From the IMG/VR virus record IMGVR_UViG_3300024265_000607, positions 1 through 6,699 of that record: a stretch of 6,699 bases of DNA. One strand, written 5' to 3'. Both the position numbers and the translations under genes were made by a program. The notes below the pieces were generated by a model. That model searched no databases, was not told the origin of the DNA, and saw only the letters and a program-made list of their open reading frames with translations. Positions within the stretch are counted from its first letter, which is position 1. Each line of letters starts with the position of its first letter. Of the stretch, positions 1 to 6,699 are shown in pieces.

Positions 1-6
1 AAATTC

Positions 7-144
7 TTATATAAGATTAATTTTATTTATAATATTTACATTATCATCTATATCTGTTAATCTTGATAATATCATAATTGGAATGAAAATAAATATAAAT
101 ATAATTTCAAATATAAATAATATAATTTCAGTAATTTTTCTCAT
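7..144 (-). CDS. Small single-pass membrane protein, 45 aa (not in ORF track)
   Basis: Manual translation from ATG 144 to TAA 9-7: MRKITEIILFIFEIIFIFIFIPIMILSRLTDIDDNVNIINKINLI. It starts 2 nt after the stop of 147-272 and has a basic N-terminus followed by a hydrophobic stretch of about 20 aa. Confidence 0.6.
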   Translation of the reverse strand: MRKITEIILFIFEIIFIFIFIPIMILSRLTDIDDNVNIINKINLI

Positions 145-146
145 AA

Positions 147-272
147 TTAACTATTTTTCTTATATTTATTTTTCAATTCTTTACATTGAATACATTTTCT
201 TACATCATTAGTTTGATTAACACATAAATCTATTCCTTTAATCCAACAATACTTTAATTTATTTTTTGACAT
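147..272 (-). CDS. Small basic Cys-rich protein, putative zinc-binding, 41 aa (not in ORF track)
   Basis: Manual translation: MSKNKLKYCWIKGIDLCVNQTNDVRKCIQCKELKNKYKKNS, with Cys at 9, 17, 27 and 30. The ATG overlaps the upstream stop (TAATG at 274-270) and AAGGA lies just upstream. Confidence 0.65.
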   Translation of the reverse strand: MSKNKLKYCWIKGIDLCVNQTNDVRKCIQCKELKNKYKKNS

Positions 273-457
273 TACTTATCCTTAATTATGTCAATTACAA
301 ATTTAAATAAATTTACTTGATGATTATTTAATTTAATTATCTGTCTTTTTCTTTTTTTATTTCCATTACTTCTATTGTAATTTATTAATATCTTTAAACC
401 ATTTTTATTATATTGCTGAAGTTTAATTTCCTTAGATATTTTAATCGTTGTTAGCAT
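272..457 (-). CDS. Small basic hypothetical protein, 61 aa, possibly nucleic-acid binding
   Basis: ORF track. Lys/Arg-rich (KKRKR). It overlaps the ATPase 3' end by 17 nt, has an AAGGT SD-like motif upstream, and its stop is coupled to the next ATG. Confidence 0.65.
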   Translation of the reverse strand: MLTTIKISKEIKLQQYNKNGLKILINYNRSNGNKKRKRQIIKLNNHQVNLFKFVIDIIKDK

Positions 458-1151
458 TTTTATTACCTTTTAGTCTTATATAAATATATTTTTCATAAGC
501 TAAATCAATACCATTCATTAATAACTTATCCTTAACTAAATCGTGAGTTATTTTACCGTTTAATTCTGATTTTATCATTTCGGTTAATTCAATAATATAA
601 TCTCTTAATCTTATAGGGTATCTTTTTAATAAACCAAATTCTAATCTGTTCTTTCTTGTTGATTCTACTTTTTCTAAAGTATTATACATTTTAAAATATT
701 GTTTAGCATCAGAATAAAGAAGTGTAATATCTGAATATGATTTATTTTCCTTATCATAAAAAACAAAATGAAAATCATCAACTTCAAAATTTTCTCTATG
801 TTCGCAAAGTATTATAAAATTAACTAATTTCCTAAATCTTTTATCGATTGTAGAAAAATCTGGTGTAGTAATATATATATCTGTAAAAGTTTTCCTTGAA
901 TGATATAAAATACTTGATAAATAAGCATTTAAATAATCTTGACTTGCTCTTGATTCTAACCAACTATATCCTTCATCCATTAAGAGATTTATATTATCTG
1001 GTAAATTAAATAAATCAACAACTTCTAATTCTCTATAATTTACAGAATCAATAAAATAATTGCTCCAAATTTGTTTATTATTAAAATAAGTGAGTAATGT
1101 CATAATTAGAGTTTTACCACTCCCTAAATTACCAAGAATAATAACTAACAT
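441..1151 (-). CDS. Zot/pI-like (FtsK-HerA-related) P-loop ATPase, putative virion morphogenesis ATPase
   Basis: Walker A GNLGSGKT (aa 7-14) at the extreme N-terminus, WSN (aa 29-31), Walker B LLMDE (aa 56-60), SRK (aa 85-87) and ITTPxxxxIDKRFR (aa 94-107). This order matches the Zot/pI family. No TM segment. TAATG coupling with the upstream gene. Confidence 0.85.
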   Translation of the reverse strand: MLVIILGNLGSGKTLIMTLLTYFNNKQIWSNYFIDSVNYRELEVVDLFNLPDNINLLMDEGYSWLESRASQDYLNAYLSSILYHSRKTFTDIYITTPDFSTIDKRFRKLVNFIILCEHRENFEVDDFHFVFYDKENKSYSDITLLYSDAKQYFKMYNTLEKVESTRKNRLEFGLLKRYPIRLRDYIIELTEMIKSELNGKITHDLVKDKLLMNGIDLAYEKYIYIRLKGNKNANND

Positions 1152-1501
1152 TAATCTAATTTTGATGTAAAAGCATTCTCATTATATTCTTTTGAATTAG
1201 AAAATGTAAATGCTTTTATAATTTCAGTTCTACTTTTTCTTTTATAACTTACCATATATTTTAGATAAGTTTCAATATAATTATTTATACATTTACTTGA
1301 ATGTTTTAAACCAATATTTTCTAAATAAATTGCTATTGTTTTTAAACCTGCTAAAGCTTTAGGTTTAAATATATGTGTTTTTAATTCTAAATTTTCTTTA
1401 GCATCAAGTAAATTATTTAATATTTGTTGTAATGTTATTTTATTATCTTTTGATAATACTTTTAAAGGATTATCAAAAATAGGAATATCATCAAGAGACA
1501 T
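1151..1501 (-). CDS. Soluble hypothetical protein, 116 aa, translationally coupled to the ATPase
   Basis: ORF track. AGGGGG SD-like motif upstream (about 1510-1515), 0-nt gap to the upstream gene and 1-nt overlap with the ATPase. Basic motif VSYKRKSRTE near the C-terminus. Confidence 0.8.
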   Translation of the reverse strand: MSLDDIPIFDNPLKVLSKDNKITLQQILNNLLDAKENLELKTHIFKPKALAGLKTIAIYLENIGLKHSSKCINNYIETYLKYMVSYKRKSRTEIIKAFTFSNSKEYNENAFTSKLD

Positions 1502-1903
1502 TTATATTGCCCCCTTAGCAATCCAACCAATTAAACCTCCAACAATACCTCCAATAATTATATACATAAGTAAACTTTTATAATCTGTATTTCCTAATTC
1601 AGAAGTTAATTGTTTAATTATTTTTTTTCTTATAATCATATCTATTATACCTGTATCTACTTTTGAAGTTTTTCTTTTTATTTCAGAAAATAGTAATTGG
1701 TCTTTTGTATTTTTATCTATATAATAAATCTGATTTAATCCTTTACTAAAAGTTCTTTCAGAAGTATCAATAATATATGAATTACCTTTATAACTAATCC
1801 CGTTTTCTGAAACATTGGAAGGATTAAATAATTTTTTTCCTATAATTGTATAAGAATCTAATTCTTTTATTAAAAATACAGCTATATATCTTTTTTTAAA
1901 CAT
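1502..1903 (-). CDS. Tail-anchored membrane protein, 133 aa
   Basis: Basic soluble N-terminal domain and one C-terminal TM helix, LLMYIIIGGIVGGLIGWIA, with stacked GxxxG motifs. Confidence 0.8.
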   Translation of the reverse strand: MFKKRYIAVFLIKELDSYTIIGKKLFNPSNVSENGISYKGNSYIIDTSERTFSKGLNQIYYIDKNTKDQLLFSEIKRKTSKVDTGIIDMIIRKKIIKQLTSELGNTDYKSLLMYIIIGGIVGGLIGWIAKGAI

Positions 1904-1919
1904 TATTATAATCTCATTT

Positions 1920-2219
1920 TTATTTTTTATGATAATAATCTACAGAAGCAATAATCATTAAGGTTGATTGAAATACAAGAAAGAATATTTCAAATATAGG
2001 AGTAAAGGGTTCATGACCGTGAGCAATACTATTCATACCAATTATTAATGAAAAACCATATATTACTATAATTGGTAAAATATCTTTTATAGCTCTATAA
2101 CAATATAACATTAAAATTATTAAAGAAATTATTGTAATAAAATGAAATGTTAATTGACCAATTTCAAAAAATACCTCTATTTCTGTATCTGGAGGGAAAG
2201 GGGGTTGTTGTATATTCAT
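1920..2219 (-). CDS. Three-TM membrane protein, probably 99 aa (start revised from GTG 2237 to ATG 2219)
   Basis: Three hydrophobic segments. GGAGGT at 2235-2230 lies 10 nt upstream of ATG 2219, which follows the upstream stop (2226-2224) by 4 nt. The track's GTG start overlaps that SD motif. Confidence 0.75.
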   Translation of the reverse strand: MNIQQPPFPPDTEIEVFFEIGQLTFHFITIISLIILMLYCYRAIKDILPIIVIYGFSLIIGMNSIAHGHEPFTPIFEIFFLVFQSTLMIIASVDYYHKK

Positions 2220-2223
2220 ATCT

Positions 2224-2670
2224 TTAATTACCTCCACTTATTTTTTTTACTACTCCAATAGAATATGCTACAGTTAACATTATATAAATTAAAGTACCAA
2301 ATAATTCAATACTTACTATTAAATTAAAAGCAAGAAAAGAAAGAACAGCCCATACTCCAGCAAAACCAGTAAGTAAAATAACAATTTTAGCAGATTCAGC
2401 GTTTAATCCACTTCCTACAACTTGAATTCCTGTAAGTAATGCCACTCCTAATACAGTTATAAGTAAGGCTATTCCTGCTAATTCTAAAGCTGAAGTATCT
2501 ATATAAAATAAAACATCTTGAGCTTCTACTACAAAAGTAGTAGTAGAACCGTTTACTATAGCTGTATTATCTACAGCTACAGAAACAACTTGACCAAATA
2601 AATTACCACCTAAAACTAATGAAAATAAACCAATTACAGATAAAATTAATAATGTAGCAGAAATTAACAT
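2224..2670 (-). CDS. Multi-pass membrane protein, 148 aa, putative minor virion protein
   Basis: N-terminal hydrophobic helix, a beta-rich loop with an NGS sequon, then three further hydrophobic helices around a GIQVVGSGL linker. GAGGT at 2685-2681. Confidence 0.8.
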   Translation of the reverse strand: MLISATLLILSVIGLFSLVLGGNLFGQVVSVAVDNTAIVNGSTTTFVVEAQDVLFYIDTSALELAGIALLITVLGVALLTGIQVVGSGLNAESAKIVILLTGFAGVWAVLSFLAFNLIVSIELFGTLIYIMLTVAYSIGVVKKISGGN

Positions 2671-2671
2671 T

Positions 2672-2902
2672 TCAAGACATACCTCTTTTATAAGCTTTAT
2701 TGATTATAATTAAAGTTAAAATAACTAAACACATTATTAAAATCCATAATTCTACTAATCCAGACCAAACAACAAAACCACTAAATATTGTTAGAAATAC
2801 AAAAAAAGTTTCAAAATCTTTAAAAGTAATATATGTCATAAAAAGAGCTAAAAGAAACATAATACTAATACCAAGAATCCAATTTGTATCTGAAATTGCC
2901 AA
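2672..2902 (-). CDS. Three-TM membrane protein, 76 aa
   Basis: TTG start immediately after the TAA of the 994-aa gene, with GAGGT at 2914-2910 (7-nt spacing). Almost wholly hydrophobic with a basic C-terminus. TGA stop. Confidence 0.8.
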   Translation of the reverse strand: MAISDTNWILGISIMFLLALFMTYITFKDFETFFVFLTIFSGFVVWSGLVELWILIMCLVILTLIIINKAYKRGMS

Positions 2903-5887
2903 TTATACAACCTCATTCTTTTTTCTTAATATAAATATACTTGAACTAATAGCAATAACAAAAAATAACCAAATTGGTATAATTTCTGTTATAGCACATA
3001 ATAAAGACATTAGTAAAAATAAAGGCATTATAGATTCTTTTCCTAATCTTAAACCAATTAACATAGTAGGTAATAGTATAATAAGTAAAGGTACTAACAT
3101 TAAAAGTAATGATAATGTAGCTACAGTAATATTAAAATTTACTCCAAAACCAAAAACAATATTAGATATATATCCAGTTGTTATTCCTACTAAACTGTTA
3201 ATATCGTCATCTGTTATAGTAATTATTATTTGATTTACTATTTTTTCTTGAGTTAAAACTGCTGAAGTAGTACTAAAAAATGAAGGTAATTCTAATATAT
3301 TACTCGTATCATCATTGAATCCTACTTGAAAAAATCCTTTTGCTATATTATTTTTATTAGATTGAAAAATAATTGTTCTGTCATTTGTATTAATAGGAGC
3401 AAAAAGAATGAACGATATTTGAATGAATTCTACATTAGTATCATCAGCTTCATGAATAAAAGCAAGTCTATTATTTGAATCAACATAAAAGAAACTTGTT
3501 TCTGAATCTACACCACTATTAATAAAAGTTGGTATTAAAGTAGCTTCACTTTGTATTGCTCTTACACCAGTATTCTTAAATGATGTATATTGAAATGTAT
3601 TATTAAAATTTAACCTAAAAGATACAAGAGAAGTAAAAAAATAATCTTTTTCACGAGTATTAAAAGTAGTAATATCAGAATAGATTTTTATACTTCTTAG
3701 AATTAAATGAGAAGTATCATCTAATATAGTAAAAGTAATATTACCAATTCCATTAAAAGTAAATAAAGGATGTAGAAAAGAAAAATATGTTTTATTAGTA
3801 AAAAATTCAAAATAACCAAATTCATTATTATTACTAACAGAACTAATTAATGAATTTCCATTAATATATACTCCAAGATTATCTAACCAATATACAATAA
3901 CTAATCCTGGTGGTTGTACACTTGTAATAAATTTTACTTTTCCTAATGTATGACTTGTAGAATTTAAAATTGGTATATATATTGAACCAATAAAAGTGGT
4001 GTTAGTACTGAATCTAAATATTGAAATATTATCATTAAAATTAATATATAAATTACAGACATAATCTATATTTGTACCTAAACCACTAAATAAAGTAATT
4101 TGATTACTTCTTACGTTTGGAGCTTTAAATTCAATATCAGTAATTAAATTTCCATCATTATTAAATAAAAGAACTGAAGCATTTTTTGCTCCTACATCAA
4201 AATGATTAAATTCAATATTCCAACTTAGATTAATAATATCTGCTTGTTTATTAAAAACTTTTTCTATTCCAAAAAATTCTTGAGATAATCCCGGACTTGC
4301 TATACCAACACGTCTATTAGAATCTAAAGGATAACCATACTGTATATCAACAAAAGTATCTGTAGTATCTAATATTGTCCAATTACTTATATCTTTGCTA
4401 TCTATATCTCTTAATGTAATTAAATCATCTTTAAAATCAAATTTAAATTTATCCACTTCTTTTATAGATTGAGAAATATCAAGATAAGGAATTAAATTAG
4501 AACCTATAATATATTGTCCTGAAGAACGGAAAACATCATAATATCTAATAGAATCAATATCCCAAACAACACCAACCTCAAAAGTATCTGTAGCAATACT
4601 AAAATATCTTATATATGAAGTTAAAGGATTTAAATCAAAATAATGACCAATTAAATTTGAATCTACATATATAGATACTTTCATAGTAATAAAATTAATA
4701 GTAAAAGAAATATTATACCATACATCAACAGAAATATCATAAATAGGAATAAGAGAACCATTAAAAAAATTTAATTTATTGTTATGAATAATAAGTTGTA
4801 GAGCTATATTTACTCCATCAGAAAATTGAATTTGACATAATTTATCAGCATTAGAAATTCTTGAATAAAAATCAATTAAGGTTTTATGAATAGCAGAAAA
4901 ATTATTTTCAATAGCTACATTTTTATTATTAGGGTCTATTAAACTAATATATTTTCCATCAATAGAATCTGTATTTTCTATATTTGCTATTACTCCAGCA
5001 CCAGATTTTAAATAAGTCATATTTTCATATAAAGGAAATAAACTATTATCAAATTCAGTACCTATGGTAAATTCTTGAAAAGTGAACCCTACTTGACTTG
5101 ATTCAAATAATTTTAAATCCCAACTAAAACCAATAGCATCAATATATACTTTATAATTAGTATCAACTGTATGTGTCTCTACTTTCATTTGAAAAAAAGC
5201 TTCTGATACAAATCTAAAGTCATAAACTCCTAAATTTATGTTATTTAAATAAAATCTATATTCATTAGAACCTAATCCTAAATATCCACCTCCACCAGTT
5301 TCAAAATCAATTCTATAATGATACCATTGATTATCTAATGGAATTGGAGCATTTGGTATAAGTTGATAAGTAATTCCATCATATTGATAAAAATTATCTA
5401 AACTAATAAAAATTAATACACCACCTCCTAAATTATCATCGCTAATAGCTACAAAAGATAAATCTGTGGTATCTGTAGTTAATATCCACATTTCTATAGT
5501 ACCAAAATCTTGTAATTCAAATTCATTAAGAGTAGAAACAACTTCGGTGTTTGATGTATCATCCAGTTCTAATATTTTATCATGATTTAAAAAAGAAGGA
5601 AAAATATTAACAGTCCCACCAGTTTCAATAACCGACCAACCTATAGGATTATTGCCTATAATATCATTTGTAAAAGTATAAGTGGCATTATAAGTATTAG
5701 TATAAATAGATTTACTCCTAAAATTATAACTATTTGTAAAATTAAAAGAATTATCTTGATAATTAGTTATCTCATCAAAAGTAATTGAAATATCAGATTC
5801 TTGAGCTAAATTAATTCTTGGAAGTAAATTAAATAAAATAGAAATAAGAATTAACAAACCAATTATTTTTTTATTTGTTTTATTCAT
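2903..5887 (-). CDS. Large secreted, membrane-anchored beta-rich protein with LamG/concanavalin A-like repeats; putative receptor-binding adhesin or terminal fibre, 994 aa
   Basis: Signal-peptide-like N-terminus (KK plus hydrophobic aa 8-22). LamG-like motifs DNQWYHYRIDF...FYLN and DVWYNISFTIN...IYVD, and repeated domain-end motifs YIDAI, DIDSI and WLDNL. Three TM helices at about aa 921-987, followed by RKK. Confidence 0.8.
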   Translation of the reverse strand: MNKTNKKIIGLLILISILFNLLPRINLAQESDISITFDEITNYQDNSFNFTNSYNFRSKSIYTNTYNATYTFTNDIIGNNPIGWSVIETGGTVNIFPSFLNHDKILELDDTSNTEVVSTLNEFELQDFGTIEMWILTTDTTDLSFVAISDDNLGGGVLIFISLDNFYQYDGITYQLIPNAPIPLDNQWYHYRIDFETGGGGYLGLGSNEYRFYLNNINLGVYDFRFVSEAFFQMKVETHTVDTNYKVYIDAIGFSWDLKLFESSQVGFTFQEFTIGTEFDNSLFPLYENMTYLKSGAGVIANIENTDSIDGKYISLIDPNNKNVAIENNFSAIHKTLIDFYSRISNADKLCQIQFSDGVNIALQLIIHNNKLNFFNGSLIPIYDISVDVWYNISFTINFITMKVSIYVDSNLIGHYFDLNPLTSYIRYFSIATDTFEVGVVWDIDSIRYYDVFRSSGQYIIGSNLIPYLDISQSIKEVDKFKFDFKDDLITLRDIDSKDISNWTILDTTDTFVDIQYGYPLDSNRRVGIASPGLSQEFFGIEKVFNKQADIINLSWNIEFNHFDVGAKNASVLLFNNDGNLITDIEFKAPNVRSNQITLFSGLGTNIDYVCNLYINFNDNISIFRFSTNTTFIGSIYIPILNSTSHTLGKVKFITSVQPPGLVIVYWLDNLGVYINGNSLISSVSNNNEFGYFEFFTNKTYFSFLHPLFTFNGIGNITFTILDDTSHLILRSIKIYSDITTFNTREKDYFFTSLVSFRLNFNNTFQYTSFKNTGVRAIQSEATLIPTFINSGVDSETSFFYVDSNNRLAFIHEADDTNVEFIQISFILFAPINTNDRTIIFQSNKNNIAKGFFQVGFNDDTSNILELPSFFSTTSAVLTQEKIVNQIIITITDDDINSLVGITTGYISNIVFGFGVNFNITVATLSLLLMLVPLLIILLPTMLIGLRLGKESIMPLFLLMSLLCAITEIIPIWLFFVIAISSSIFILRKKNEVV

Positions 5888-5891
5888 AATA

Positions 5892-6044
5892 TTAAAATAT
5901 TCTAATAATAATTAATATAAATGTTAAAATTAAAAATGAATATAATGTAGCTTTAACAATAAGAATAATATCTCTTTTAACTAAATTAGCTTCTATATTT
6001 CCCTTTTCTCTAAGTTTATCTATTTCTAATTCTTTTTCTGTCAT
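5892..6044 (-). CDS. Small C-terminally anchored membrane protein, 50 aa (not in ORF track)
   Basis: Manual translation: MTEKELEIDKLREKGNIEANLVKRDIILIVKATLYSFLILTFILIIIRIF. It fills the gap between the capsid-like gene and the adhesin, with its stop 4 nt before ATG 5887. Confidence 0.7.
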   Translation of the reverse strand: MTEKELEIDKLREKGNIEANLVKRDIILIVKATLYSFLILTFILIIIRIF

Positions 6045-6048
6045 GATT

Positions 6049-6062
6049 AAAAAAATAAAAAA
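6049..6062 (-). terminator. Putative archaeal oligo-T intrinsic terminator after the capsid-like gene
   Basis: The minus strand reads TTTTTTATTTTTTT (T6-A-T7) about 20 nt after a tandem TAA TAA stop, with no GC-rich hairpin in front. Confidence 0.55.
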
Positions 6063-6081
6063 TAGTAATTAATTTTCCTTA

Positions 6082-6321
6082 TTAACTTGAAGTTCTTGGT
6101 AGGAAAATTATTACTACGGCAATAATGGCTATAATAGGTAAGAGAACAGTGAGCAAGGTTAAAACAGATGGGTCTATTACCGCATCTAATCTTTCACCAG
6201 AAGTGGCATTCACTACAACATTTCCCGCATTACCAATTAAACCTAAAGCAATAGGATAAATTACAGCTACAACCATTAATCCTACAGCTAACATTACAAG
6301 AGTACGGATATTATCTCCCAA
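6082..6321 (-). CDS. Putative major capsid protein of spindle-shaped virus type (hydrophobic alpha-helical hairpin), 79 aa
   Basis: Two long hydrophobic helices (about aa 8-29 and 53-74), each with an internal Pro (IYPIA, LLPII), joined by a polar loop containing an NAT sequon (aa 38-40). First gene after the promoter and followed by a terminator. TTG start. The architecture resembles fusellovirus VP1/VP3 and the His1 capsid protein. Confidence 0.7.
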   Translation of the reverse strand: MGDNIRTLVMLAVGLMVVAVIYPIALGLIGNAGNVVVNATSGERLDAVIDPSVLTLLTVLLPIIAIIAVVIIFLPRTSS

Positions 6322-6386
6322 AATTACATCAACTTTTAGAAATGAAAAATTTTTAGTTAAAGTTAATTAAAAGTAAGATACGTTCA

Positions 6387-6402
6387 CTTTTAAACTTTTT
6401 TG
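6387..6402 (-). promoter_or_regulatory. Putative archaeal promoter (BRE + TATA box) for the structural operon
   Basis: Minus strand CAAAAAAG-TTTAAAAG: a purine run directly followed by a TTTAWA box at 6394-6387, in the only sizeable intergenic region and about 65 nt upstream of the capsid-like start. The AT-rich background lowers specificity. Confidence 0.5.
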
Positions 6403-6467
6403 TTAAAAATCCAAATTAAATAAAAATTTTGACCTGATAAAAATTAATTGACATTTTTGTTAAAAAT
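6397..6467. repeat. 14-bp exact direct repeat TTTTTGTTAAAAAT (6397-6410 and 6454-6467)
   Basis: Read directly from the sequence. The unit is quasi-palindromic, and the first copy overlaps the putative BRE. Confidence 0.6.
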
Positions 6468-6698
6468 TTTATTATATTTAATACTACAATCTTTTTCTAT
6501 TAACATTTTTGGAAATAATATTCTAATAGGGCAAATTCTACAACCAGAATGAATAATATTTAAATCATATTCTCTTAATTTATTTTCAAATAATTTGTCA
6601 TAATAATTTCTTGAAAATTTTCTATTTCCTTTTAATAAATCTCGATATGGATAACCTTTAATAATATTTTGGCTTTTATGAAATCTTATATAAGTATT
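6444..6698 (-). CDS. 3' end of a gene truncated by the window edge; possible PAPS reductase (CysH)/DndC-like protein
   Basis: 84 stop-free codons ending at TAA 6446-6444: NTYIRFHKSQNIIKGYPYRDLLKGNRKFSRNYYDKLFENKLREYDLNIIHSGCRICPIRILFPKMLIEKDCSIKYNKIFNKNVN. YPxxD followed by SGCxxCP resembles the C-terminal part of the PAPS reductase family. The PP-loop would lie outside the window. Confidence 0.6.
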   Translation of the reverse strand, partial: NTYIRFHKSQNIIKGYPYRDLLKGNRKFSRNYYDKLFENKLREYDLNIIHSGCRICPIRILFPKMLIEKDCSIKYNKIFNKNVN

Positions 6699-6699
6699 T

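What the first reader, a model, noticed from the sequence alone, without database searches (positions are those of the whole stretch)
3857..5692. Adhesin built from at least three diverged tandem LamG/ConA-like modules of about 190-200 aa
Modules at about aa 66-257, 266-451 and 478-677 share ordered motifs: YTFTNDIIG / FTFQEFTIG / FKFDFKDD; KILELDD / KYISLID; LNEF / ENNF / EKVF; QWYHYRIDF / VWYNISFTI; FYLNNINLG / IYVDSNLIG; YIDAIGF / DIDSIRY / WLDNLGV. No obvious DNA-level repeat remains, so the duplications are old or the modules were acquired separately. From unverified recollection, module 1 (YNATYTF..D..G..P.GW ... DAIGFSWD) resembles a domain in Lokiarchaeia surface proteins. If so, the virus may have captured a host glycan-binding domain, and module swapping could set host range.
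Basis: partly seen in the sequence, partly recalled or inferred. Interest (0 to 1): 0.6.

Follow-up and report, generated by a model that had tools for sequence, protein, structure and literature searches.

The report
Wyrdvirus adhesin with tandem lectin-like modules
The gene encodes the cell-attachment protein of a spindle-shaped virus of Asgard archaea; it is built from three related lectin-like domains, and the outermost one belongs to a domain family that Asgard cells use in their own giant surface proteins.

Summary

- **Homology:** pairwise BLASTP sees nothing, but profile-profile comparison does. M1-M2 gives E 8e-31, M1-M3 4.7e-8 and M2-M3 3.7e-6; reversed controls are no better than E 0.03.
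- **Rest of the protein:** a fourth all-beta domain (aa 683-892) of unassigned fold, then a C-terminal membrane anchor.
- **Identity:** the window is an internal piece of a 14.4 kb linear genome with terminal inverted repeats. Its structural genes match Lokiarchaeota virus WyrdV1 gene by gene, and the WyrdV1 homologue is already annotated "adhesin, carbohydrate-binding protein".
- **Variation:** among 151 relatives, M3-M4-anchor is the usual core and the number of N-terminal modules varies from 0 to 3. One origin of the second modules is rejected (AU p 9e-5).
- **Host link:** M1 belongs to a family found mostly in Asgard genomes, in 1-8 tandem copies.

The direction of transfer between virus and host is unresolved. 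This is a new member of a known kind.

The parts
2903..5887 (-). Adhesin gene, 994 aa (P0001). Layout: signal peptide, M1, M2, M3, M4, C-terminal membrane anchor.
   Evidence: ORF list and translation. Full-length BLASTP match to the WyrdV1 adhesin, 25% identity, E 1e-53. The GenBank note on that protein reads 'Adhesin, carbohydrate-binding protein'.
5804..5887 (-). N-terminal signal peptide or anchor (aa 1-28; hydrophobic stretch aa 7-28).
   Evidence: Hydropathy scan. An N-terminal hydrophobic stretch is conserved in the alignment of relatives.
5117..5686 (-). Module 1 (aa 68-257): ConA/LamG-like beta-sandwich of the Asgard-associated 'YNATYxF...NxWYH...DAIGYSWD' family.
4523..5101 (-). Module 2 (aa 263-455): a second ConA/LamG-like beta-sandwich. 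It is optional in the family and homologous to module 1.
4460..4513 (-). Conserved start of the core (aa 459-476; Y459, N464 and P467 nearly invariant). It joins the variable N-terminal modules to M3.
   Evidence: Alignments A1 to A3 and the conservation table.
3854..4459 (-). Module 3 (aa 477-678): a third ConA/LamG-like beta-sandwich, part of the conserved core.
3212..3841 (-). Module 4 (aa 683-892): a confidently modelled all-beta domain of unassigned fold, part of the conserved core. It shows no detectable relation to M1-M3.
   Evidence: pLDDT above 90 and about 17 strands. hhalign to M1-M3 gives E >= 0.16. No Pfam hit. The fold-search lists were filled by M3. Only weak leads to CBM_4_9 or discoidin-like domains.
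2924..3148 (-). C-terminal membrane anchor (aa 914-988; two to three hydrophobic helices).
   Evidence: Hydropathy segments 914-949 and 952-988. Strongly conserved among relatives.
6082..6321 (-). Context: His1-like major capsid protein (79 aa, two hydrophobic segments).
   Evidence: 38% identity to both WyrdV1 MCPs, E 8e-17 and 3e-14; their annotation is.
1151..2902 (-). [quoted passage not shown]
   Evidence: Each gene matches its WyrdV1 counterpart in the same order, 35-51% identity. The paper describes this five-gene block as conserved in wyrdviruses.
441..1151 (-). Context: pI/Zot-like P-loop morphogenesis ATPase without a transmembrane domain.
   Evidence: Pfam Zot 5.3e-6 and PHROG morphogenesis families. 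42% identity to the WyrdV1 AAA+ ATPase, E 6e-60.

Best explanation
The ORF is the receptor-binding adhesin of a wyrdvirus, a spindle-shaped virus of Asgard (Lokiarchaeia-type) archaea related to His1.

**Layout.** After a signal peptide, the ectodomain is a string of four beta-rich domains. M1, M2 and M3 are ConA/LamG-like sandwiches descended from one domain type. M4 is an all-beta domain of unassigned fold. Two to three C-terminal helices follow.

**Proposed mechanism (inferred).** The C-terminal helices anchor the protein at the pointed end of the virion. M3-M4 form the usual stalk. The N-terminal M1-type modules are the distal, exchangeable part that contacts the host surface, most likely a glycan. 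Their number varies from 0 to 3 in relatives; this virus has two.

**Shared domain family.** M1 belongs to a family that Asgard cells use in tandem arrays in giant surface proteins. A putative fibre protein of a tailed virus carries it too. The virus may therefore bind the same surface ligand that the host's own proteins recognise.

**Shown:** domain borders, homology among M1-M3, the folds, the synteny with WyrdV1, the variation in module number, and the Asgard distribution of M1.

**Inferred:** position in the virion, glycan specificity, and any role in host range.
For: - **Virus identity:** the window equals bases 6255-12953 of a 14,404-bp contig. That contig has terminal inverted repeats and a protein-primed DNA polymerase. 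Nine window genes, eight of them with a BLASTP match (the 50-aa ORF has none), lie in the same order as in WyrdV1 MZ666939: MCP, small ORF, adhesin, five genes, pI-like ATPase. The wyrdvirus paper names this gene the receptor-binding adhesin.
- **Module homology:** hhalign E 8e-31, 4.7e-8 and 3.7e-6, with clean reversed controls. In 15 relatives the second module scores better with the M1 HMM than with the M2 HMM, down to E 3e-39.
- **Pfam:** Laminin_G_3 or Sialidase-like_CBM hits in the relatives' modules.
- **Architecture across relatives:** 151 core-containing representatives carry 0 (16), 1 (91), 2 (42) or 3 (2) N-terminal modules. Five module-less proteins have intact signal peptides.
- **Module reshuffling:** a single clade of position-2 modules is rejected (p-AU 8.7e-5). 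Position-1/position-2 sister pairs have 96-98% support.
- **Host family:** 134 relatives of M1 in genomes, mostly Promethearchaeota, in ORFs of 279-3532 aa with 1-8 copies. One lies next to ESCRT genes. 62 of 301 sampled genomes of that phylum carry the module.
- **Tailed virus:** P0013 lies directly after a baseplate wedge gene.
Against: - P0001 itself hits no Pfam lectin family. Glycan binding rests on fold and on relatives only.
- ConA-like folds also occur in enzymes and in protein-binding LNS domains.
- The modules were not superposed on each other directly. Each was superposed on the same PDB domains instead.
- The M1-M3 link is weaker than M1-M2. It could reflect shared superfamily membership rather than a duplication inside this gene.
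- No CRISPR spacer links this genome to a host, and its 22% G+C is low.
- The host assignment rests on homology to WyrdV1 and on the distribution of M1.
Confidence: 0.75

Rival explanations
1. The modules are enzymes, not lectins. In this reading the protein is a virion-borne depolymerase (GH16 glucanase-like or PL7 lyase-like) that cuts host surface polysaccharide.
Against: - No ExDx(x)E motif of the GH16 type occurs anywhere in the protein.
- Pfam hits in relatives are Laminin_G_3 and Sialidase-like_CBM, not enzyme families.
Confidence: 0.06
2. The modules bind a host surface protein rather than a glycan, as neurexin or laminin LNS/LG domains can. One possible target is the host's own M1-array proteins.
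For: Laminin LG4-5 pairs and neurexin LNS domains are among the Foldseek matches to the M1-M2 model. The same module family decorates giant Asgard surface proteins, which would allow like-with-like contacts.
Against: The closest structural neighbours are carbohydrate-binding domains. Nothing tested here separates glycan ligands from protein ligands.
Confidence: 0.2
3. M3 is not a duplicate of M1 or M2. It is a separately acquired ConA-like domain that is simply part of the old core. Only M1 and M2 are paralogues.
For: - M3 occurs only together with M4 and is present in nearly every relative, whereas M1-type modules are optional.
- The M1-M3 score (54.7) is far below the M1-M2 score (191).
- No cellular protein with M3 was seen, apart from one misbinned viral contig.
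Against: - M1-M3 and M2-M3 alignments are full-length and collinear, at E 4.7e-8 and 3.7e-6, against controls at E 0.03 or worse.
- The M3 HMM weakly detects both N-terminal modules of WyrdV1, at 1.4e-3 and 0.04.
Confidence: 0.3
4. The virus captured module 1 from its host recently and repeatedly.
For: Viral and cellular modules look interleaved in a FastTree tree of 391 modules, which needs 25 label changes. The M1 clade of P0001 sits next to five Promethearchaeota modules with 87% SH-aLRT support.
Against: - Under the mixture model, a tree with all 45 viral modules held together has a log-likelihood 49.65 higher than the free search (p-AU 0.81).
- Highest identity of P0001's M1 to any of the 86 other modules sampled for the tree, viral or cellular, is 47% (P0003, a viral module); its best tblastn segment against the 77 genomic loci is 29-38% identical.
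- The tree is unrooted, so direction cannot be read.
Confidence: 0.15

Closest known systems
Adhesin of Lokiarchaeota virus WyrdV1 (GenBank MZ666939, protein QYW08118, 973 aa; Medvedeva et al., bioRxiv 10.1101/2021.07.29.453957)
   Same: - Homologous over the full length (25% identity, E 1e-53).
- Same domain string: M1, M1-like, M3, M4, C-terminal anchor.
- Same place in a collinear structural gene block.
   Different: - Only 25% identical.
- The second module of P0001 is of the more diverged 'M2' type.
- This genome is linear with terminal inverted repeats and a protein-primed polymerase, like WyrdV2/3 and His1.
- Neither the papers held in the library nor the record's note describes the modular anatomy.
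Tip adhesins of other spindle-shaped archaeal viruses (Fuselloviridae, Halspiviridae), as cited in the wyrdvirus paper
   Same: A large virion protein encoded next to the hydrophobic His1/SSV-type capsid protein gene. The paper says it sits at one pointed end and binds the receptor.
   Different: No sequence relative other than WyrdV1 was found in the 50,697-record phage collection. Homology to the SSV or His1 proteins was not shown here.
Carbohydrate-binding (ConA-like) domains of bacterial sialidases: BT_1020 (PDB 5mqr), Akkermansia Am1547 (8hls, 8axs), Vibrio cholerae sialidase lectin domain (2w68); Pfam Sialidase-like_CBM and Laminin_G_3
   Different: Sequence identity is 8-14%. There is no attached catalytic domain. 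The ligand is unknown.
Giant multi-module surface proteins of Asgard archaea (for example the 2606-aa ORF in L015 with 8 copies; ORFs up to 20,619 aa)
   Same: They carry the same M1 domain family, with the motifs Y(N/P)ATYxF, H-x-KV, GTIE-x-W, N-x-WYH and DA(I/V)GYSW.
   Different: These are cellular genes; one lies beside ESCRT genes. Copies are about 295 aa apart. Extra parts include Big_13 Ig-like domains, Zn ribbons or an esterase domain. They have no M3-M4 core.
Receptor-binding proteins of tailed viruses with lectin-like tips (here P0013, encoded after a baseplate wedge gene)
   Same: Tandem M1-family modules plus Laminin_G_3 domains in a protein placed where tail fibres are encoded.
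   Different: A different virus type (baseplate genes). There is no M3-M4 core and no C-terminal anchor of the wyrdvirus type.

Membership tests
ConA-like lectin/glucanase (LamG) superfamily | Beta-sandwich of about 180-200 aa that superposes on solved ConA-like domains | tested here: met
ConA-like lectin/glucanase (LamG) superfamily | The query itself reaches a Pfam family model of the clan (Laminin_G_3 and the like) | tested here: not met
   P0001 has no Pfam hit to the clan at E <= 1. This is a matter of sensitivity: 36 of the 113 relatives' N-terminal regions (modules 1 and 2) reach Laminin_G_3 (best 1.2e-10) and 23 reach Sialidase-like_CBM.
ConA-like lectin/glucanase (LamG) superfamily | Carbohydrate or Ca2+ binding site on the concave face or rim | not testable with these tools
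Only conserved residues are listed: in M1, H102, E132, W134, W188, H190, N215 and D250.
Three homologous tandem modules (internal repeat) | Significant collinear profile-profile similarity between the modules, above controls | tested here: met
   E 8e-31, 4.7e-8 and 3.7e-6 over 160-174 columns, against reversed controls at E >= 0.03. Pairwise BLASTP alone fails.
Wyrdvirus adhesin | Full-length homology to the WyrdV1 adhesin | tested here: met
   BLASTP 25% identity over aa 18-990, E 1e-53. All four module HMMs hit WyrdV1 in order.
Wyrdvirus adhesin | Gene order: His1-like MCP, small ORF, adhesin, five conserved genes, pI-like ATPase without a TM domain | tested here: met
   Matches of 35-51% identity for eight of the nine genes, in the same order; the small 50-aa ORF has no BLASTP match. 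The layout is as described in the paper.
Wyrdvirus adhesin | Located at the virion tip and mediates adsorption | not testable with these tools
   Needs virions. No cultured host or virus is available for this sequence.
GH16 / PL7 enzymes of the same fold | Catalytic ExDx(x)E motif (GH16) | tested here: not met
   A regular-expression search of P0001 finds no such motif.
Asgard cellular M1-array surface proteins | Chromosomal gene with tandem M1 modules about 295 aa apart and no viral core | tested here: not met
   P0001 carries the viral M3-M4-anchor core and lies in a viral genome. It shares only the module.

The most novel reading that the evidence does not exclude
The distal M1-type modules of wyrdvirus adhesins are viral counterparts of the modules that make up giant Asgard cell-surface proteins. 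They would bind the same surface ligand as the host's own proteins. Gain, loss and exchange of these modules (0 to 3 per adhesin, also shared with a tailed virus) would then set which Asgard lineages a virus can attach to. If so, the module family would serve as a sequence handle for pairing uncultured Asgard viruses with hosts, and for finding a receptor on the Asgard cell surface.
Probability: 0.3. Interest if true: 0.6.

Novelty: new member of a known kind. Interest (0 to 1): 0.42.

Why it matters
Very few Asgard archaea and almost none of their viruses are in culture, so how these viruses recognise cells is unknown. This analysis turns an "adhesin" label into a concrete anatomy. There is a usual M3-M4-anchor stalk, with 0 to 3 exchangeable lectin-like modules on top. 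Those modules belong to a family found mostly in Asgard genomes, where it also builds the cells' own giant surface proteins. That gives testable constructs (M1, M1-M2) for binding studies on cultured Lokiarchaeia. It also gives a marker domain shared by unrelated Asgard viruses. It does not change the picture of the virus family, whose adhesin was already annotated as carbohydrate-binding.

Tried and rejected
- **Pairwise BLASTP between modules:** nothing significant. Only profiles and structures reveal the repeat.
- **Pfam and PHROGs on P0001:** no useful hit.
- **Word search restricted to the core region:** only 3 proteins. The exhaustive profile search was needed.
- **Genome scan with the broad M1 alignment:** A narrower alignment worked.
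- **Fold of M4:** pdb_via, pdb_via_wide, the atlas fold search and the protein atlas were all dominated by M3 or gave only weak leads. Pfam found nothing.
- **BFVD search:** many uncharacterised virion proteins, no specific relative.
- **CRISPR-spacer link to a host:** a DNA search of 400 genomes of the phylum gave mostly short AT-rich matches. Six candidate sites of 27-36 nt at 94-100% identity were fetched, and none lies in a repeat array. No host link was obtained this way.
- **Repeated virus/host exchange:** the FastTree picture was rejected as unreliable after the AU test.
- **Not used:** Complex prediction and the reads tools, because no claim here rests on them.
Full report
**What is in the window.** The 6699-bp window has 22% G+C and all its long ORFs lie on the minus strand. 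The finding sits in ORF 2903-5887, which encodes 994 aa (P0001). Coordinates 3857-5692 correspond to aa 66-677. The protein starts with a hydrophobic signal-like stretch (aa 7-28). It ends with two to three hydrophobic helices (aa 914-988). Pfam and PHROGs give no hit for it.

**Is the repeat real?** BLASTP between the three proposed modules finds nothing (E > 1). A word-based search found 15 relatives, and they define the modules independently. In seven of the eleven closest, the sequence runs straight from aa 258 to aa 459 of P0001, so module 2 is an optional cassette with borders at 258/259 and 458/459. Module 1 recurs two to five times in tandem in longer proteins of a different kind.

Profile-profile comparison with these few sequences already gave M1-M2 at E 1.7e-17 and M1-M3 at E 1.8e-5. 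An exhaustive profile search with the core (aa 459-892) then gave 256 representatives. With the deeper alignments (42-134 rows), hhalign gave these results:
- M1-M2: prob 99.9, E 8e-31, 174 columns.
- M1-M3: prob 94.9, E 4.7e-8, 163 columns.
- M2-M3: prob 87.4, E 3.7e-6, 160 columns.
- Twelve reversed-profile controls: E >= 0.03.
- M4 (aa 691-892): no relation to the other three.

No DNA-level repeat survives.

**Fold.** AlphaFold2 models were built on alignments of 113 and 134 relatives. The aa 55-460 model has pLDDT 89.4 and the aa 459-892 model has pLDDT 93.5; both are all-beta. Foldseek matches are ConA-like proteins throughout, including tandem pairs such as laminin LG4-5 and tandem-repeat galectins. 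VIA-align gives the ranges:

|---|---|---|---|---|
| M1 | aa 68-257 | 16.2 | 2.7 A / 164 | 8axs_A 387-594 |
| M2 | aa 263-455 | 22.1 | 2.4 A / 177 | 5mqr 413-616 |
| M3 | aa 477-678 | 19.2 | 2.7 A / 176 | 5mqr 414-614 |

All three therefore land on the same carbohydrate-binding domains of bacterial sialidases. Of the relatives' N-terminal regions, 36 of 113 reach Pfam Laminin_G_3 and 23 reach Sialidase-like_CBM.

M4 (aa 683-892) is confidently modelled and all-beta, but its fold stays unassigned.

**What virus and what gene.** The window is identical to bases 6255-12953 of a 14,404-bp JGI contig. [quoted passage not shown] The only relative in the phage collection is Lokiarchaeota virus WyrdV1 (MZ666939).

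Gene by gene, the window matches WyrdV1 in the same order:
- His1-like capsid protein: 38% identity.
- A small ORF.
- Adhesin: 25% identity over the full length, E 1e-53.
- Five small genes: 35-51% identity.
- pI/Zot-like ATPase: 42% identity.

This is the structural gene block described for wyrdviruses. In that description the large gene is called the receptor-binding adhesin, and its counterparts in fuselloviruses and halspiviruses sit at a pointed end of the virion. My module HMMs parse the WyrdV1 adhesin as M1 (61-238), M1-like (238-433), M3 (437-665), M4 (666-866) and anchor. The papers held in the library do not describe this anatomy.

**Variation among relatives.** There are 151 core-containing representatives, clustered at 50% identity. 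Of these, 91 have one N-terminal M1-type module, 42 have two and 2 have three (P0134 probably also has three). Sixteen have none, and five of those have an intact signal peptide followed directly by the core. In 15 two-module proteins the second module scores better with the M1 HMM than with the M2 HMM, down to E 3e-39. So M3-M4-anchor is the usual part and the M1-type modules are add-ons.

In an IQ-TREE mixture-model tree of 87 modules, position-1 and position-2 modules pair up with 96-98% support. Forcing the 15 position-2 modules into one clade is rejected, with a log-likelihood 120.8 lower and p-AU 8.7e-5. Second modules therefore arose or moved more than once.

**The Asgard connection.** A motif-seeded scan of one genome per prokaryotic species found 134 relatives of M1. 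The best 80 lie in 77 loci, labelled as follows:
- 58 Promethearchaeota.
- 2 Hodarchaeota, 1 Hermodarchaeota, 1 Odinarchaeota.
- 10 unclassified archaea.
- 4 DPANN-labelled bins.
- 1 Bacillota-labelled bin.

This scan used one strict motif, so it measures enrichment rather than exclusivity. The ORFs are 279-3532 aa long and carry 1-8 tandem copies about 295 aa apart. Only one short contig (L072) carries the viral core.

One such gene lies beside EAP30, ESCRT-II and Vps4 genes on a 3.34 Mb chromosome. Another lies beside a Ras/Roc GTPase gene in an Odinarchaeota bin. These are cellular genes. They also carry Big_13 Ig-like domains, Zn ribbons or an esterase domain. In a sample of 301 genomes of that phylum, 62 carry the family, in open frames of up to 20,619 aa. 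P0013, with several M1-family modules plus Laminin_G_3 domains, is encoded directly after a baseplate wedge gene on a 46 kb contig. That makes it a putative tail fibre of a tailed virus.

**Direction of transfer.** A FastTree tree of 391 modules looks interleaved, needing 25 virus/cell changes, but this is not robust. With all 45 viral modules held on one side of a branch, the tree scores 49.65 log-likelihood units higher than the free quick search (p-AU 0.81). The data fit a single old split between viral and cellular modules, followed by duplication and shuffling within viruses. Without a root, capture from the host cannot be told from the reverse.

**Mechanism.** The domains, their homology, the C-terminal anchor, the synteny and the variable distal modules are shown. 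The rest is inferred. In that model the anchor fixes the protein at the virion tip, M3-M4 form a stalk, and M1/M2 bind a host surface ligand, most likely a glycan. The virus would then exploit the same recognition module as the host's own surface proteins. An enzymatic role is unlikely: the best matches are non-catalytic domains and there is no GH16-type motif. Binding to a protein instead of a glycan is not excluded.

**Host link.** A search for CRISPR spacers against the 14.4 kb genome in 400 genomes of the phylum gave no site inside a repeat array. Two related wyrdvirus-like contigs are binned with Asgard genomes. The host assignment rests on these bins, on homology to WyrdV1 and on the distribution of M1.

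**Verdict.** Module swapping is plausible. Host capture is unproven. The protein is a new member of a known kind, the wyrdvirus adhesin. The modular anatomy and the shared Asgard domain family are the added value.

Noticed in passing
window 1-6699 = L004 6255-12953 (reverse): IMG/VR classes the record as a 'provirus'. It is in fact an internal piece of a 14,404-bp linear contig with imperfect terminal inverted repeats (arms 48-304 and 14108-14404) and a protein-primed DNA polymerase. That is a free His1-like genome, not an integrated element.
   Followed up: partly
L007 8133-13717: On a 46 kb contig, a 1238-aa protein with M1-family and Laminin_G_3 modules follows a baseplate wedge gene (phrog_6, 1.6e-40). 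Sulfotransferase, glycosyltransferase and radical SAM genes lie downstream. This looks like a tailed virus that shares the adhesin module with wyrdviruses.
   Followed up: partly
G210:C13, G281:C47, G269:C48, G245:C95, G171:C163, G248:C35 (genome handles): Asgard genomes hold open frames of 11,000-20,600 aa that contain M1-family modules. These are giant putative surface proteins.
   Followed up: no
P0065, P0088, P0145, P0148, P0154: Wyrdvirus-type adhesins of 607-656 aa go from a signal peptide straight into the M3-M4 core, with no N-terminal lectin-like module. What contacts the host in these viruses is open.
   Followed up: no
P0040, P0081, P0129, P0139: These adhesins have one M1 module followed by about 120 extra residues before the core (core starts at aa 361-389). 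The extra stretch matches none of the four module profiles, so it may be a different inserted domain.
   Followed up: no
L009 1721-6536: P0012 (1525 aa; one M1 module plus a weak CBM96 hit) follows a 77-aa gene on a 13.8 kb contig of mostly unknown genes, one of them an Rce1-like protease. It may be another mobile element that uses the module. The 77-aa protein has no PHROG hit.
   Followed up: partly
G192:C743 (L089) and G074:C100 (L090): Contigs binned in two genomes of the Asgard phylum share 71% and 64% nucleotide identity with the polymerase region of the 14.4 kb genome. G074:C100 also matches near the ATPase gene. These are probably related wyrdviruses in host bins.
   Followed up: no
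L072 (Aenigmatarchaeota-labelled bin, 2951 bp) and L051 (Bacillaceae-labelled bin): L072 carries a wyrdvirus-type adhesin (M1 plus M4). L051 carries a three-module M1 protein. Both labels look like binning errors rather than a true host range.
   Followed up: no
window 2700-3233 (+): A 177-aa ORF runs antisense to the end of the adhesin gene and the next gene. Its lysine/isoleucine-rich translation looks like a by-product of the AT-rich sequence, not a gene.
   Followed up: no
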